Part shown: piece by piece, positions 28,779 to 33,187 of the stretch
Numbering within the stretch: position 1 is the stretch's first letter
How the letters are laid out: the number at the start of each line of letters is the position of its first letter
DNA from: Macrostomum lignano
Taxonomy: Eukaryota
Reading direction: 5' to 3'
NCBI GenBank assembly: GCA_002269645.1
Contig: NIVC01004816.1
Coordinates: 1 to 34,395 of the forward strand
DNA: 34,395 nucleotides
Notes under the pieces: model-generated
The model's database searches: none
Seen by the model: only the letters and a program-made list of their open reading frames with translations
What the model was told of the DNA's origin: nothing
Made by a program: the position numbers and the translations under genes

Positions 28779-29238
28779 ATGGTAGAGCCGGTAAAGCTAG
28801 CGAGTTCAAGCAGCAATACGGCGCAGGGACTTTCGGCTCGTAGTCAGCCAAAAGCAAAACCACAGTTTTATTTAGTAATGAGCGAGAAATTTTCCTGGTT
28901 GGAATTTCACCAAGAGTTGAAGTGTGCCGGCCTCACCAAAAAGAGGGCCGCCTTTCAAACCCGGATTGGCGAGCTGGTGGAAGGCGTCGCAGCCGCCGTG
29001 GTTGGCATCAGCGGCGAGTCCTACTACGACTGGATGATGACGGGCAGCTTCGTGGAAGGCTGGGGCAATAATCTGTTCAGGCTGGACGGCGTCACCGGCG
29101 TAGACTCCGACATCGATTGGAGCCAAGTTGTCAAGCACAAGGTGTACCACCTGCGCAGAACCTGCCACTCTGTGGTTGACTGCATCAATAGGAAAGACTA
29201 CGAGTTGAAAAATGGGCACATTGTTGTGAAGAACAGCA
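28779..29238 (+). CDS. Mab-21/cGAS-like nucleotidyltransferase (cGLR-type), exon 1
   Basis: MVEPVKL...MMTGSFVEGWGNNLFRLDGVTGVDSDIDW: the GS-x2-EG...D-S-D-I-D pol-beta-superfamily NTase motif. Polypyrimidine tract plus CAG acceptor ends at 28763; GTGAGT donor at 29239 (phase 1). Confidence 0.85.
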
Positions 29239-29367
29239 GTGAGTGTTGCATTGGATTGCATTGTATATGAAATCAATAATTGTGTTTTGATTTGACCGGG
29301 CAAACGCTCTATGCTTCATTTGTATGCAGCTCACAGTGCTAGGGGACCTAGGGGTATACATGTACTA

Positions 29368-29591
29368 TCACTGAAGGAACTGGGGATACTCACTGAAGGA
29401 CCTTGGGGATGCTCACTGAAGGACCTTGAGGATGCTCACTGAAAGACCTTGAGGATGCTCACTGAAGGACCTTGAGGATGCTCACTGAAAGACCTTGAGG
29501 ATGCTCACTGAAGGACCTTGGGATGCTCACTGAAGGACCTTGAGGATGCTCACTGAAGGACCTTGGGGATGCTCACTGAGGGACCTTGGGG
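29368..29591. repeat. 23-bp minisatellite (GCTCACTGAAGGACCTTG(G/A)GGAT), ~9-10 copies, NTase gene intron 1
   Basis: Direct tandem periodicity of 23 nt. Confidence 0.93.
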
Positions 29592-29678
29592 ACCTACGCT
29601 CTGAAGGACTCGATCCTTTGTGGTCCATAAAACAAGCGGAATTCCGATCTCGCAAAATGACCTCCCCTCGGCTGTCAG

Positions 29679-30027
29679 GTCAGCAGCCGGCATTCGACAC
29701 GAAGCGTCACGGACTGCGCCCCGACACGGACGAGTGTCACGCCTATCCGTGCTGCTCCTACCCGGCCACTGTGCTGGACGATGATCAAGATGAAGTCAAC
29801 ACTGACAGATATCCAGTATGCGATAAATTTCAACAGATTATTAAGACGCAGTTTGACAACGAGAATCCGATCGAAGATGTGCACTTTGTTCGGGCCAGCG
29901 TGCCAGGCGAGGTGAACCAGCTGCGCCTGAGCTGCACTAGGCAGGAGCGCTTCATAATGAGTCAGCTAAGCACAGTTCAAGGACAGCTGTTCACTGTGCT
30001 CAAATATCTATTCAAAACTAAGGAGGA
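29679..30027 (+). CDS. Mab-21/cGAS-like nucleotidyltransferase, exon 2
   Basis: DTDECHAYPCCSYP (position of the third catalytic acid / DxVxAxxCxxWP-like motif), HFV...LRLSCTRQERFIM..LSTVQGQLFTVLKYLFK (Mab-21 RLSFSxxE...LK motif). CAG acceptor ends at 29678; GTAAGT donor at 30028 (phase 2). Confidence 0.85.
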
Positions 30028-30067
30028 GTAAGTATTGATATTTCGTTCGATACATTGCCTGCATTAG

Positions 30068-30511
30068 TGTCTGTCTGTCTGTCTGTCTGTCTGTCTGTCT
30101 GTCTGTCTGTCTGTCTGTCTGTCTGTCTGTCTGTCTGTCTGTCTGTCTGTCTGTCTGTCTGTCTGTCTGTCTGTCTGTCTGTCTGTCTGTCTGTCTGTCT
30201 GTCTGTCTCTCTGTCTGTCTGTCTGTCTGTCTGTCTGTCTGTCTGTCTGTCTGTCTGTCTGTCTGTCTGTCTGTCTGTCTGTCTGTCTGTCTGTCCGTCT
30301 GTCTGTCTGTCTGTCTGTCTGTCTGTCTGTCTGTCTGTCTGTCTGTCTGTCTGTCTGTCTGTCTGTCTGTCTGTCTGTCTGTCTGTCTGTCTGTCTGTCT
30401 GTCTGTCTGTCTGTCTGTCTGTCTGTCTGTCTGTCTGTCTGTCTGTCTGTCTGTCTGTCTGTCTGTCTGTCTGTCTGTCTGTCTGTCTGTCTTCTGTCTG
30501 TCTGTCTGTCT
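30068..30511. repeat. (TCTG)n microsatellite, ~110 units, NTase gene intron 2
   Basis: Near-perfect tetranucleotide array filling most of the intron. Confidence 0.99.
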
Positions 30512-30551
30512 ATTAGATGAATGTTTTAATGATGATCTGTTGCAATCGCAG

Positions 30552-33187
30552 CGAACGCAACCCCAAGTCGGAGAAGAAGATCATCGAGAGCGTGAAATCC
30601 TACCATGCAAAGACCTTGTTAATGAAGTTGCTGCGCGACCGGGACAGCTGGCCAGAAAACGGGCATGACGATGACGTAGAGGAAGATGAAGAGGCATCAA
30701 AGAGGCTGGAGCGACTGGTCTGGCGCGGGCTCGGCTTTCTGTTGCGATCGATCACAACTAACCTTCAAGCTGCGGAGGCTGGCGAGGAGCCAAGCGGTGG
30801 GTGTCCCAATACAGACTAAGTCTGCTTCACTGCACTGCTCACCTGATCACTGCTTACCTGAAAATCTCCTCGATTTCAGGCGATTCGAAGGAACCACCAC
30901 AGTCTCCATCTCGGCAGGCTTCAGTCGCCTCCAGCAGCGCGTCCACGAAGAGCTCGAACTCGAAGGTTCCGCGAGTACTGGACCATGCACTGCTGAAGGA
31001 CTGCGGTCTCTACTTGAAGCCAAAAAAGCCAAAAGAGGCAACTAAAAGCAGCAAGTCGTCTATTCTGTCTTTTATTTTTCGATCGCCGCAGGAGCAGCCG
31101 AATAAGGCGATATCTGCGATAGAGGCTCACGCTAGCGCTCTTGAGGAGATGAAGGAGGACCTGCTAGGTCTGATCGGCAAGCGGGGAGACATGGACGATG
31201 TGCTCGCTGAGACGCCTGGAATTCTGTGGGAGAGAGGTTCAAGCGCAGTCAGTGATTTGAACGAGAGCTGAAGAAGCTGAACGAGCCGGAGCTGAAAATG
31301 GTTCTGGAAAAGTTCGAAAAACGAACTCAGAGTGAGATTGAAAGCATGAGCCAGAGTAAGGACACAAGTCAGGGTCAGGGCGCTAGCCGTAGCCAGGGAG
31401 AGGACACAAGTCAGGGCCAGGGCGCTAGCCATAGCCAGAGTGAGGACCCAAGTCAGGGCCAGGGCGCTAGCCATAGCCAGAGTGAGGACACAGTCAGGGC
31501 CAGGGCGCTAGCCGTAGCCAGAGTGAGGACCCAAGTCAGGGCCAGGGCGCTAGCCGTAGCCAGAGCCTGACTCGGAGTGAAAGTGAAAATGACATGAGAC
31601 AAAGAGAAGAGAAGCTGCGCAAGAAAATCGCGAATCTGTATGGAAAACTCGGCGATACCTACAAGCTATACGACGTTCTAAAAGACTATCAGACCCGAGT
31701 GACGAGTACTTCGGACGAAAGAAAAAAGCACGGCAAGAAAGAGGATGTCATCGGAGATGAGGCACAATTTCTTTTCATTCCGTTAGCAATGATGCTGCGC
31801 GAATCACGTTAGACACTCTGCTTGACGAGAAGGGGCGTCGATTGAAAAAAGAAAAAACTACCGGAGCTGCCGAATGTTCAACTACCGGAGCTGGTGAAAG
31901 TTCAACTACCGTAGCTGCCGAAGGTTCAACTACCGGAGCTGCCGAAGGTTCAACTACCGGAGCTGGTGAAAGTTCAACTACCGTAGCTGCCGAAGGTTCA
32001 ACTACCGGAGCTGCCGAAGGTTCAACTACCGGAGCTGCCGAAGGTTCAACTACCGGAGCTGCCGAAGGTTCAACTACCGGAGCTGCCGAAGGTTCAACTA
32101 CCGGAGCCGCCCAGGGTTCAACTACCGGAGCTGCCGAAGGTTCAACTACCGGAGCTGCCGAAGGTTCAACTACCGTAGCTGCCGAAGGTTCAACTACCGG
32201 AGCTGGCGAAGGTTCAACTACCGGAGCCGCCCAGGGTTCAACTACCGTAGCTGCGAAGGTTCAACTACCGGAGCTGGAAGGTTCAACTACCGAGCTGCCG
32301 AAGGTTCAACTACCGGAGCTGCCGAAGGTTCAACTACCGTAGCTGCCGAAGGTTCAACTACCGGAGCTGCGAAGGTTCAACTACCGGAGCTGGCGAAGGT
32401 TCAACGAACGAACCTTTCAAGGATTCGGCAGTCGACCAAAAAGCAATAAATGAGCTTAAAAAGGCTTACATTAAAGTCTGGATTGTACTGAGAAGCCTGA
32501 GCGATTCAGAGAGGAATTCATCTGAGCCTAGCCAGACCCAGGGCCCTAGCCGTAGCCAGAGCCAGGACGCTGGCCAAAGGCCCAGCGACAGCTCACTGCA
32601 GAAGACCAAGCAATGGATCAAAAACAAGGCGTTTCTAAAGACCACTTGGCTGTGCCTGGAGATCATGGAGAATCTAAAGAATGGCCACATGGAGGAGGTG
32701 AAACGGCTCCTCAGGGAAACCGATTGTCAGCCAACACGATGGATCAAACCAGAGAAGGATTACGACTTCGCCAAGCTGCTCAGAGAAGAGGACTGCGTAT
32801 GGATATTTCACTACTTCATCAGGCCCAATATAAAGATCAGCTACAACTACTTGAACGACGTGCAGAATCCGGTCGAAAGAGGCACCAAAAATTGAAAAAC
32901 GAACGGAATACGAGAAAGGCGAAGGCAGGGTGTTCGAGTACATTAACGGTGTGCGCAAGGACTGGCTGATTCACCTGGTTGTCAATCAGGACGACAAGAA
33001 AAGCCGGCAGCCGAGTCTCACTGTCAATTTCGACGGCCTGCTGGACCGATTCAGGCGTCGATTCGGTGACGGCAACGTGGACGTCGATTCGGCAGCACAG
33101 ATAAAGGGACGACGACTATTTGGACCAATGAAAAACTGCCTGTTTGACCCACGCGAGGCGGAGAGGCTGGAGGCGCGAGAGGTTTAA
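30552..33187 (+). CDS. Mab-21/cGAS-like nucleotidyltransferase, exon 3 (Mab-21 C-lobe plus long extension); about 9 frameshifting indels in this sequence
   Basis: [16 protein letters not shown] (Mab-21 SYHxKT motif). ORFs 30517, 30801, 31298, 31594, 31842, 32665 and 32930 chain into one reading by restoring bases in short runs at ~30800, ~31256, 31492, ~31802, four sites in 32250-32370, and ~32877. I saw no in-frame stop in the corrected reading. TAA at 33185-33187. Confidence 0.7.
31349..31566 (+). repeat. Coding 42-bp repeat, 5 copies ([13 protein letters not shown](R/H))
   Basis: 14-codon unit; copy 4 lacks one A at 31492. Confidence 0.93.
31857..32403 (+). repeat. Coding 24-bp repeat, ~23 copies (TTGAAEGS)
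   Basis: ACTACCGGAGCTGCCGAAGGTTCA units. Substitution variants keep frame; a few late copies lack 1-2 nt in CC/GG runs. Confidence 0.95.

What the first reader, a model, noticed from the sequence alone, without database searches (positions are those of the whole stretch)
28779..33187. cGAS-like receptor candidate (~1150 aa) with an unrecognised, modular C-terminal extension
Seen: an apparently complete Mab-21/cGAS-DncV-like NTase core (GSFVEG, DSDID, DECHAYPC, RLSCTRQE, LKYLFK, SYHAKT) in the first ~380 aa. It is followed by ~770 aa of charged, probably helical segments (e.g. [28 protein letters not shown]; [25 protein letters not shown]; [23 protein letters not shown]; [19 protein letters not shown]), separated by Ser/Gln/Gly/Thr linkers. 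The linker at ~32520-32570 ([13 protein letters not shown]) resembles the 42-bp repeat, hinting at internal duplication. Known: animal cGLRs make cyclic dinucleotides for STING signalling and are diversified in invertebrates. Inference: an innate-immune sensor or enzyme fused to a sensor/effector region I cannot assign to a known domain.
Basis: partly seen in the sequence, partly recalled or inferred. Interest (0 to 1): 0.7.

Follow-up and report, generated by a model that had tools for sequence, protein, structure and literature searches.

The report
Flatworm cGAS-like receptor gene, frame-broken copy
This is an unannotated and unusually divergent copy of a large family of cGAS-like immune-sensor genes specific to the flatworm Macrostomum lignano; its long "extension" is mostly the family's usual C-terminal domain stretched by coding tandem repeats, and its reading frame is broken in this assembly by about nine small indels.

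Summary

At least nine others are real breaks of 1-2 bases in the assembly.

The only close protein is a fragmentary Macrostomum lignano model. An exhaustive search found 67 more clusters. All 20 that I checked are M. lignano, and most are ankyrin + divergent NTase + Mab-21_C proteins.

Li et al. 2023 already list relatives from this family as cGLRs and cloned five of them.

A profile of paralogues matches exons 1 and 2 at about 1e-28 each. The family profile hits only cGAS/cGLR/Mab-21 chains in the PDB (best 7.5e-8). A confident model of a paralogue best matches cGAS.

GS, DxD and the third Asp are kept. The gene has no ankyrin repeats and its core is acidic (pI 5.8).

The "extension" is not a new fusion. 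It consists of the rest of the Mab-21 C-lobe, two coding tandem-repeat arrays, and the family-wide C-terminal domain (30.6 bits against at most 5.4 for shuffles). That domain has no Pfam or PDB match.

The frame breaks look like assembly errors (about 60-65%) rather than true decay. Verdict: a new member of a known kind, of modest interest.

The parts
28779..29238 (+). Exon 1: start codon and the N-lobe of the NTase core. Holds MTGS (G89 S90 at 29043-29048) and D111-I-D113-W (29109-29120).
   Evidence: Paralogue HMM positions 12-117, E=3.5e-28. GS and SDxD are invariant in the family. The donor is CA|gtgagt.
29239..29678 (+). Intron 1 (GT-AG, phase 1), filled by a 23-bp x9.9 minisatellite at 29368-29592.
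   Evidence: The intron position (..S|QPA..) is shared with the paralogue gene for P0005 in locus L001.
29679..30027 (+). Exon 2: third catalytic Asp (D171, 29729-31, in RPDTDECHAYPCCSYP), then HFVRAS, RLSCTRQE and TVQGQLFTVLKYLFK.
   Evidence: HMM positions 119-222, E=8.5e-28. D171 aligns with the family's nearly invariant Asp.
30028..30551 (+). Intron 2 (gtaagt..cag), holding a (TGTC)111 microsatellite at 30068-30511.
   Evidence: The splice restores a family-length [18 protein letters not shown] junction. The paralogue P0005 has no intron here.
30552..30796 (+). Exon 3: SYHAKT helix and W-P-E-N, followed by an acidic insert ([12 protein letters not shown]) and the C-lobe helix [15 protein letters not shown].
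   Evidence: HMM positions 233-278, E=1e-3. The Pfam Mab-21_C hit is below threshold, E=0.12, at aa 257-300.
30797..30879 (+). Intron 3 (83 nt, gtgggt..tttcag). Without splicing, a stop is reached at 30817-30819.
   Evidence: The P0001 model uses the same junction, [11 protein letters not shown]. This is inferred; there is no transcript evidence.
30880..31271 (+). Exon 4, first part: a Ser-rich insert, a degenerate C-lobe motif [15 protein letters not shown] (family: CMPHFFLKDAxLYLK), helices, and the stop TGA at 31269-31271 as assembled.
   Evidence: (weak, HMM 274-306). P0001 reads [16 protein letters not shown] across this stop, which implies a 1-bp deletion (aaCCga to aaCga) near 31258.
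31349..31565 (+). Coding 42-bp tandem repeat x5.2, (SQGQGASxSQSEDx)n. One unit is 41 nt (31452-31492), which shifts the frame.
31566..31855 (+). Helical charged segment ([32 protein letters not shown] ... [18 protein letters not shown]) with one frame change between 31761 and 31809.
   Evidence: [10 protein letters not shown] resembles the family helix (E)IYDVVRE by eye, but this is not significant against the HMM.
31856..32405 (+). Coding 24-bp tandem repeat x23, (EGSTTGAA)n. The units at 32236, 32259, 32281 and 32352 are 23, 22, 23 and 23 nt long.
   Evidence: Restoring the five missing bases puts the flanking frames in phase.
32407..32892 (+). C-terminal domain, first part. It includes one degenerate 42-bp unit (32530-32603) and the family-conserved module [39 protein letters not shown]...[11 protein letters not shown] (32593-32838). 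A frame change lies in an A5 run near 32886-32892.
   Evidence: The C-terminal HMM built from 16 paralogues gives 30.6 bits, i-E 2.9e-8, against at most 5.4 bits in 1000 shuffles.
32891..33187 (+). C-terminal domain, second part (..LTVNFDGLL at 33023-33043..FDPREAE..), then stop TAA at 33185-33187. It ends about 60-70 aa short of the paralogues' domain.
   Evidence: MAFFT places VNF and D..E on the family's invariant N150, F151, D183 and E186. It is not significant against the HMM on its own.

Best explanation
The locus is one gene of Macrostomum lignano. It is a divergent, ankyrin-less, acidic paralogue of that flatworm's lineage-specific expansion of cGAS-like receptors (Mab-21-fold nucleotidyltransferases). 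Its layout follows the family plan: an NTase N-lobe (GS, D-I-D, third Asp), then a helical C-lobe, then a family-specific C-terminal alpha/beta domain of about 230 aa. This copy differs in having an acidic insert and a Ser-rich insert inside the C-lobe. It also has two expanded coding tandem repeats, (SQGQGASxSQSED)5 and (EGSTTGAA)23, that push the C-terminal domain far from the enzyme core. The ancestral sequence was a single ORF of about 1,120 aa. The nine or more breaks of 1-2 bases in the last 2 kb are most likely uncorrected long-read homopolymer or repeat errors (about 60-65%), not real decay. By inference from characterised cGLRs, ligand binding would reposition the GS loop and the enzyme would condense NTPs into a cyclic di- or oligonucleotide signal. 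The C-terminal domain, and in paralogues the ankyrin repeats, would then serve ligand or partner recognition. Shown here: gene structure, family membership, catalytic-motif conservation, homology of the C-terminal module, and the nature of the frame breaks. Inferred: enzyme activity, ligand, downstream receptor, and whether the frame breaks exist in the animal.
For: Species and closest copy: P0001, an M. lignano protein, E=1e-253. Family: 68 hits with E<1e-3 among 1.84 billion representatives (P0001 itself plus 67 others), and all 20 clusters checked are M. lignano. Pfam on paralogues shows ankyrin repeats plus Mab-21_C at or just above the cutoff. Li et al. 2023 Table S3 rows 89-93 are five M. 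lignano cGLR constructs with the same motifs. The paralogue HMM scores the spliced core at 219 bits, E=7e-69, and its hits on the window are collinear. The window residue is identical at 45 of 57 columns conserved in at least 85% of paralogues, including GS, SDxD and the third Asp. A profile that includes the window core hits only cGAS/cGLR/Mab-21 chains in the PDB; the best is 8gjy cGLR1 at 7.5e-8. The AF2 model of paralogue P0005 has pLDDT 85 and pTM 0.79, and its best Foldseek match is cGAS 4k9b at 3.7e-7. C-terminal module: 30.6 bits against at most 5.4 in shuffles. Intron 1 is shared with a paralogue. Evidence that the frame breaks are artefacts: every one lies in a short homopolymer, a dinucleotide run or a repeat unit, and eight of nine are deletions. 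Restoring repeat units to 42 or 24 nt restores phase. No stop arises by substitution in 2,127 nt; P(0 stops) is 0.15-0.03 if 45-90 neutral substitutions had accumulated. P0001 reads through the first break but carries a different one where the window is intact. The neighbouring conserved ELAV-like gene also has an RRM split by a 1-base shift. Mlig_3_7, the published assembly of this species, is a PacBio/Canu assembly polished with short reads in a neopolyploid genome. I do not know which assembly the window comes from.
Against: The window protein gets no significant direct Pfam Mab-21 hit and no single-sequence PDB hit. The C-lobe motifs HFF and FHPF are degenerate, and the C-terminal domain lacks its last ~65 aa. 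These features fit relaxed constraint. No protein in 5.8 billion matches the tail, and no NCBI gene model for this locus turned up, so there is no independent evidence that the tail is translated. The break density (nine in 2.3 kb) is high compared with none in exons 1-3. The flanks of the third Asp (T-D-E) do not fit the strict h[DE]h pattern. None of the five M. lignano constructs is noted as active in Li et al. Table S3. The core is acidic (pI 5.8 against a family median of 8.6), which argues against nucleic-acid sensing. The structure of the window protein itself could not be modelled, because the tool refuses spliced sequences.
Confidence: 0.6

Rival explanations
1. A true pseudogene: a redundant copy decaying after the recent whole-genome duplication of M. 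lignano. On this view the indels are real and nothing beyond aa 481 is translated, or nothing at all.
For: At least nine frame-breaking indels lie in 2.3 kb. C-lobe motifs are degenerate and the C-terminal domain is truncated. No annotated protein covers the tail. The neighbouring ELAV-like gene is also frame-shifted, which could mean the whole segment is a decaying homeologue.
Against: There are no nonsense substitutions, and the former frames stay open. The indels are limited to homopolymer or repeat contexts and are nearly all deletions. Four of them cluster in 140 bp of one repeat array, as expected for consensus errors. The other copy, P0001, has a different break and lacks this one. The core matches 45 of 57 family-conserved residues.
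Confidence: 0.3
2. A real truncation that still yields a working protein. The frameshift at 31258 is genuine and the gene encodes a 481-aa stand-alone cGLR without the C-terminal domain; the tail is a recent 3'-UTR relic.
For: The 481-aa product holds the whole NTase core and most of the C-lobe. According to Li et al., 87% of animal cGLRs are stand-alone enzymes.
Against: P0001 reads through this site. The tail frames are still open, and the C-terminal module still matches the family HMM at 30.6 bits.
Confidence: 0.08
3. A Mab-21-fold protein that is not an enzyme, acting as a scaffold or adaptor like MAB21L1 or MiD51, despite the retained acidic residues.
For: Foldseek matches of the paralogue model include MAB21L1 and MiD51 at E-values close to those of cGAS. 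No M. lignano construct is noted as active. The third-Asp context T-D-E is atypical, and the core is acidic.
Against: GS, D-x-D and the third Asp are invariant or nearly invariant across more than 37 paralogues and are kept here. That is the criterion Li et al. used to separate cGLRs from Mab21L1-like proteins. The best PDB sequence hit is an active cGLR.
Confidence: 0.25
4. One reading: a cGLR fused to a novel, gene-specific multi-module sensor or effector region.
For: Pfam, the PDB and BFVD give no match to the tail or to the family C-terminal domain.
Against: The only non-repeat module with statistical support is shared with many paralogues, in the same order after the Mab-21 domain. Much of the rest is tandem-repeat low complexity.
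Confidence: 0.05

Closest known systems
Macrostomum lignano cGLRs catalogued by Li et al. 2023 (Table S3 rows 89-93; closest PAA93208.1 and PAA68676.1) and paralogues P0005 (PAA73301.1) and P0007 (PAA62074.1)
   Same: Same motif string: (M/I)TGS(F/Y)xEGWxN..NG.T..DSDIDW, GH, SQPA, RPxxDxCxAxxCCS, HLVRA, LR(V/L)S, TVQGQLFT, K(S/T)YHAKT, W.PEN. Same intron 1 position. Same C-terminal module (W.K...C..M..LK.G..E ... D..W.F ... VNF). Identity is 25-40%.
   Different: No N-terminal ankyrin repeats. Acidic core, pI 5.8 against a family median of 8.6. Acidic and Ser-rich inserts, and degenerate HFF and FHPF motifs. Two long coding tandem repeats lie between the enzyme and the C-terminal domain. The C-terminal domain is truncated. 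Two extra introns are filled with microsatellites. The ORF is broken in the assembly.
Characterised animal cGLRs and cGAS (Sp-cGLR1 PDB 8gjy; mouse and human cGAS, e.g. 4k9b)
   Same: NTase fold with GS, [DE]h[DE] and a third acid, plus a helical C-lobe. Profile-level sequence homology (7.5e-8) and fold-level similarity for the paralogue (Foldseek 3.7e-7, target-normalised TM ~0.54).
   Different: About 13-15% identity. No zinc thumb or basic DNA-binding surface is evident. An extra ~230-aa C-terminal domain is present. The ligand, product and receptor are unknown.
MAB21L1 / MB21D2 / MiD51 (Mab-21-fold proteins with no or unclear catalysis)
   Same: Same fold; the Foldseek E-values are close to those of cGAS.
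   Different: The window protein and its family keep the full catalytic triad and the GS motif that Li et al. report as missing from Mab21L1-like proteins.

Membership tests
Animal cGLR (criteria of Li et al. 2023) | h[QT]GS activation-loop motif | tested here: met
   M-T-G-S at aa 87-90 (29037-29048). GS is invariant in 57 paralogues.
Animal cGLR (criteria of Li et al. 2023) | [DE]h[DE]h lying 8-20 residues after GS | tested here: met
   D111-I-D113-W, 20 residues after S90. It aligns with the family-invariant SDxD.
Animal cGLR (criteria of Li et al. 2023) | Third acidic residue, h[DE]h, 50-90 residues further on | tested here: inconclusive
   D171 lies 57 residues after D113 and aligns with the family's nearly invariant Asp. 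Its flanks are T and E, not hydrophobic. The curated relatives PAA93208.1 and PAA68676.1 have Q-D-T at the same place.
Animal cGLR (criteria of Li et al. 2023) | Sequence homology across both the NTase core and the C-terminal helix bundle | tested here: met
   219 bits against the paralogue HMM over positions 12-277. The family profile that includes the window core hits cGLR1 and cGAS in the C-lobe at 7.5e-8 to 1e-6. The far end of the C-lobe is degenerate in the window copy.
Animal cGLR (criteria of Li et al. 2023) | Predicted structural homology to cGAS/cGLR | tested here: inconclusive
   This is met for paralogue P0005 (pLDDT 85; cGAS 4k9b E=3.7e-7).
Animal cGLR (criteria of Li et al. 2023) | Ligand-dependent synthesis of a cyclic nucleotide signal | not testable with these tools
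   This needs biochemistry. The five M. lignano constructs carry no 'active' note in Table S3 of Li et al..
Pfam Mab-21 (PF03281) / Mab-21_C (PF20266) | Score at or above the gathering threshold | tested here: not met
   The window protein scores only 13 bits on Mab-21_C (cutoff 24.1) and has no PF03281 hit. P0001 has no hit at all. Paralogues P0002, P0010, P0012 and P0060 just pass Mab-21_C at 24.3-26.2 bits.
M. lignano ANK-cGLR family | N-terminal ankyrin repeats | tested here: not met
   No ANK-like motif occurs in any frame of the window. The 2.9 kb upstream is AT-rich or microsatellite sequence. Some paralogue models also start at the cGLR domain, e.g. P0039 and P0034.
M. lignano ANK-cGLR family | Family-specific C-terminal domain after the Mab-21 domain | tested here: met
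   30.6 bits, i-E 2.9e-8, against the HMM of 16 paralogues; 1000 shuffles reach at most 5.4 bits. The invariant VNF and D..E are placed by alignment. The last ~65 aa are missing.
TPR / PPR or another known repeat domain (for the extension) | Significant Pfam or fold match | tested here: not met
   The confident model of the family C-terminal domain (pLDDT 86.5, pTM 0.84) has a best PDB match of E=0.23 (designed PPR, TM 0.30-0.35) and a best BFVD match of E=0.18. Pfam finds nothing at E<=10.
cGAS-STING pathway | A STING (or other cyclic-nucleotide receptor) gene in the same genome | not testable with these tools
   No M. lignano proteome search was left. The species is absent from Table S5 of Li et al.. 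Wu et al. 2014 report loss of cGAS and STING in flatworms, based on Schistosoma.

The most novel reading that the evidence does not exclude
The ~230-aa C-terminal alpha/beta domain that follows the Mab-21 domain in this gene and in dozens of M. lignano cGLRs may be a genuinely new fold. It could act as the ligand-sensing or partner-docking module of a flatworm-specific cGLR signalling system. That system would exist in a phylum long described as having lost cGAS-STING, and in some paralogues it is wired directly to caspase domains. In this copy the domain would be tethered to an acidic enzyme core by long disordered repeat linkers, which would point to a non-nucleic-acid ligand.
Probability: 0.3. 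Interest if true: 0.55.

Novelty: new member of a known kind. Interest (0 to 1): 0.3.

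Why it matters
Taken alone, the locus adds one more, probably mis-assembled, paralogue to a cGLR expansion that is already in the published catalogue, so it changes little. Three wider points are worth more. First, a free-living flatworm keeps at least 60 divergent cGLR clusters, although most platyhelminths have none beyond Mab-21-like proteins. 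Second, these genes share an undescribed C-terminal domain with no structural relative. Third, some paralogues are fused to caspase domains. Together these make M. lignano, which is transgenic and open to RNAi, a tractable system for asking what cGLRs sense and signal to when canonical STING signalling may be absent. The locus also illustrates that frame-broken genes in long-read assemblies of polyploid genomes should not be called pseudogenes without read-level checks.

Tried and rejected
- Direct Pfam scan of the spliced core and of each tail piece gave only a sub-threshold Mab-21_C hit and noise.
- Single-sequence phmmer of the core against PDB sequences found nothing.
- Two word-indexed protein searches with the core found only P0001. 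One with the de-repeated tail found nothing, so no independent copy of the tail could be obtained.
- Look-up of the contig encoding P0001 returned 'not on record'.
I did not work around this.
- A MAFFT alignment of exon pieces to P0001 misplaced the part of exon 2 that P0001 lacks, so I dropped it.
- HMM tests of the t5 piece, the 31566-31855 segment and the rest of exon 4 against the C-terminal profile were not significant. I therefore label their resemblances (LTVNF; [10 protein letters not shown]; [12 protein letters not shown]) as alignment-level or visual only.
- Foldseek of the C-terminal domain against BFVD found nothing.
- UniProt names P0001 'Bromo domain-containing protein', but Pfam gives no support at E<=10.
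- I considered reading the 24-bp repeat as (LPELPKVQ)n. I rejected this because that frame has five stops in the array, while the EGSTTGAA frame is open over the first 15 or more units.
- I considered explaining the shift at 31258 as an intron. I rejected this because there is no GT-AG pair of workable length and P0001 reads straight through.

Full report
**What is in the sequence.** The window is eukaryotic DNA. Between 28779 and 33187 on the + strand I could build a four-exon gene with canonical GT-AG introns.
- Exon 1 is 28779-29238.
- Intron 1 is 29239-29678 and is filled by a 23-bp minisatellite.
- Exon 2 is 29679-30027.
- Intron 2 is 30028-30551 and holds (TGTC)111.
- Exon 3 is 30552-30796.
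- Intron 3 is 30797-30879.
- Exon 4 starts at 30880.

The stop-free path is frame 0, then 2, 1, 0, 1 and 2, ending at the TAA at 33185-33187. Three of the apparent frameshifts are introns. The others are real interruptions in the assembly.

**Whose gene it is.** The only close protein in 5.8 billion clusters is P0001. [quoted passage not shown] UniProt calls it 'Bromo domain-containing protein', which Pfam does not support.

An exhaustive phmmer search with P0001 against 1.84 billion representatives found 67 further clusters with E<1e-3. All matched aa ~45-190, the NTase part. All 20 clusters whose members I looked up, ten of the strongest and ten from the lower part of the list, are M. lignano proteins.

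Pfam shows that these are mostly ankyrin-repeat proteins with a Mab-21_C hit at or just above threshold. A few also carry caspase, RING or WSC domains.

**Link to the literature.** Li et al. 2023 (PMC9980059) define cGLRs by three criteria:
- the motif h[QT]GS, X8-20, [DE]h[DE]h, X50-90, h[DE]h;
- homology over the NTase core and the helix bundle;
- AF2 similarity to cGAS.

They state that nematodes and most platyhelminths have only Mab21-like proteins. Their Table S3 nevertheless lists five M. lignano constructs: PAA86972.1, PAA45980.1, PAA57558.1, PAA93208.1 and PAA68676.1. Their sequences carry the same motif string as the window gene. The 'Note' column, which names the 15 active enzymes, is blank for these five. 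The family is therefore already catalogued as cGLRs, and its biochemistry is unknown.

**Is the window core a member?** Direct tests fail. Pfam gives only Mab-21_C at E=0.12, which is 13 bits against a 24.1 cutoff. Single-sequence phmmer against PDB sequences finds nothing. Profile tests succeed.
- An HMM built only from 37 paralogues hits the six-frame translation of the window in collinear order. Exon 1 matches positions 12-117 at E=3.5e-28, exon 2 matches 119-222 at 8.5e-28, and exon 3 matches 233-278 at 1e-3. Exon 4 matches 274-306 weakly, and the ORF at 32251-32892 matches 389-477 weakly. Nothing else in the window is hit.
- The spliced core scores 219 bits, E=7e-69.
- Of 57 columns conserved in at least 85% of paralogues, the window residue is identical at 45. 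These include G89, S90, S110, D111, D113 and D171.
- A profile of the window core plus 13 paralogues hits only cGAS, cGLR or Mab-21 chains among 177,635 PDB sequences. The best are 8gjy cGLR1 at 7.5e-8 and many cGAS chains at about 1e-6.
- AF2 on paralogue P0005 with a 57-sequence family alignment gave pLDDT 85 and pTM 0.79. GS lies at a strand-helix junction and the three acids lie on strands. Foldseek's best PDB matches are cGAS (4k9b, 3.7e-7), MAB21L1, MB21D2 and MiD51.

**What the 'extension' is.** It has four components.
1. Residues ~345-480 are still the Mab-21 C-lobe. They are interrupted by an acidic insert and a Ser-rich insert. The family strand CMPHFFLKDAxLYLK is degraded to [15 protein letters not shown].
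2. There are two coding tandem arrays. One is 42 bp x5.2, (SQGQGASxSQSED)n, at 31349-31565. The other is 24 bp x23, (EGSTTGAA)n, at 31856-32405.
3. Charged helical segments at 31566-31855 gave no statistical match.
4. The last ~260 aa correspond to the C-terminal domain that follows the Mab-21 domain in the paralogues.

For component 4, an HMM of that region from 16 paralogues scores the window tail at 30.6 bits (i-E 2.9e-8). The match covers [39 protein letters not shown]...[11 protein letters not shown]. The best of 1000 shuffles scores 5.4 bits. Individual paralogues align at the same relative position. MAFFT places the final piece's LTVNFDGLL and FDPREAE on the family-invariant N150, F151, D183 and E186, though that piece alone is not significant. 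The window copy ends about 65 aa short of the family domain.

Modelled alone (P0005 aa 445-699), the domain is confident, with pLDDT 86.5 and pTM 0.84. It consists of helical hairpins plus a small sheet. It has no significant match in the PDB (best E=0.23, PPR/TPR-like, TM about 0.3), in BFVD or in Pfam. However, it is a family-wide feature that Li et al. included in their constructs, not a fusion special to this gene.

**How this copy differs from the family.**
- It has no ankyrin repeats. No ANK-like motif occurs in any frame of the window, and the 2.9 kb upstream is AT-rich or a 12-bp microsatellite.
- Its core is acidic, with pI 5.8 against a family median of 8.6 and a range of 5.6-9.4. 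By the reasoning of Li et al., in which nucleic-acid sensors have pI above 8.5, this argues against dsDNA or dsRNA sensing.
- Intron 1 is at the same place as in the gene for P0005 (L001, GCA_002269645.1). Introns 2 and 3 are absent there.

**Are the frame breaks real?** Every break sits in a short run or a repeat unit.
- CC became C near 31258. P0001 reads [16 protein letters not shown] straight through this site.
- One 41-nt unit lies in the 42-bp array.
- One shift lies in 31761-31809.
- Units of 23, 22, 23 and 23 nt are clustered within 140 bp of the 24-bp array.
- One shift lies in an A5 run near 32888.

Restoring the repeat units to full length puts the flanking frames back in phase.

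There is no stop by substitution in 2,127 nt of stitched tail. In a simple simulation, 45-90 neutral substitutions, which is 5-10 times the indel count, leave zero stops with probability only 0.15-0.03.

P0001 carries a different break. ALCSGQR is the shifted reading of the window's VHFVRAS region, which implies a 2-bp loss in a TG run at a place where the window is intact. The conserved ELAV-like gene just upstream has its third RRM split between two frames with no room for an intron. The two pieces match RRM_1 positions 1-24 and 30-69, and the joined sequence scores 58 bits.

Mlig_3_7, the published assembly of this species, was built from PacBio reads with Canu and polished with short reads. 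The species is a neopolyploid, in which such polishing is ambiguous. I do not know which assembly the window comes from.

I therefore put about 60-65% on assembly artefact, meaning an intact ORF of about 1,120 aa. I put about 30% on a genuinely decaying duplicate, and a small share on a functional 481-aa truncation. The degenerate C-lobe motifs, the truncated C-terminal domain and the absence of any annotated protein for the tail keep the pseudogene reading alive.

**Mechanism, with its basis marked.**
- Shown: Mab-21/cGLR family membership, catalytic motif conservation, the shared C-terminal domain, and the repeat-coded linkers.
- Inferred from characterised cGLRs: ligand binding reorders the GS loop, the triad condenses two NTPs into a cyclic dinucleotide, and a receptor reads that signal.
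- Speculative: the C-terminal domain, and the ankyrin repeats in paralogues, provide ligand or partner recognition, and the acidic core points to a ligand that is not a nucleic acid.

Whether M. lignano has STING could not be tested. Older work reports loss of cGAS and STING in flatworms, based on Schistosoma. M. lignano is not in Table S5 of Li et al..

**Verdict.** This is a real feature, correctly located, and correctly recognised as cGAS-like. It is a new, unannotated and atypical member of a known, published kind. The 'novel extension' is largely explained. The gene's integrity is unresolved but testable with reads. Interest is modest. The more interesting leads are at family level: the uncharacterised C-terminal domain and the cGLR-caspase fusions.

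Noticed in passing
window 13726-25830 (+), especially 25560-25700: An ELAV/Hu-like RNA-binding gene with three RRMs lies upstream. Its third RRM is split between two reading frames at ~25615-25625 with no room for an intron. The two pieces match RRM_1 HMM positions 1-24 and 30-69, and the joined sequence scores 58 bits. This is a 1-base homopolymer indel in a conserved gene, and I used it as an internal control for assembly errors.
   Followed up: partly
paralogues P0039 (aa 872-1094) and P0060 (aa 1896-2107): Two M. lignano family members combine the cGLR domain, its C-terminal domain and ankyrin repeats with a C-terminal caspase domain (Peptidase_C14, E 1e-25 to 1e-27; QACRH active-site motif in P0039). 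P0012 adds WSC and RING domains. These hint at direct cGLR-to-protease or ubiquitin coupling.
   Followed up: partly
paralogues P0002 (aa 28-265 and 775-1005) and P0003 (aa 131-375 and 845-931): These gene models contain two cGLR-type NTase domains in one protein. They resemble the multi-cGLR fusions mentioned by Li et al., or they may be merged tandem genes.
   Followed up: no
window 27534-28253; 29368-29592; 30068-30511; 16365-16668; 21051-21458; 24618-25243: There is an unusually high load of perfect or near-perfect micro- and minisatellites in introns and intergenic DNA: 12 bp x60, 23 bp x9.9, (TGTC)111, 16 bp x19, 33 bp x12.4 and 20 bp x31. Two of them fill introns of the cGLR gene, and intron 2 is absent from the paralogue P0005.
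   Followed up: partly
window 33282-33553: A 133-bp unit is present in 2.1 tandem copies (97% identical) about 100 bp downstream of the stop codon. Its nature is unknown.
   Followed up: no
window 1805-2785 (+): A 326-aa open frame rich in Arg, Pro and Ala lies in a GC-rich island (GC 0.53-0.59) flanked by AT-rich DNA. It has overlapping ORFs on both strands. It could be a gene, a transposon remnant or a composition artefact.
   Followed up: no
P0001 (UniRef A0A1I8J3X3): The database name 'Bromo domain-containing protein' has no support: Pfam finds no family at E<=10. The model also skips 46 aa of exon 2 because of a 2-bp frame break in its own assembly.
   Followed up: yes
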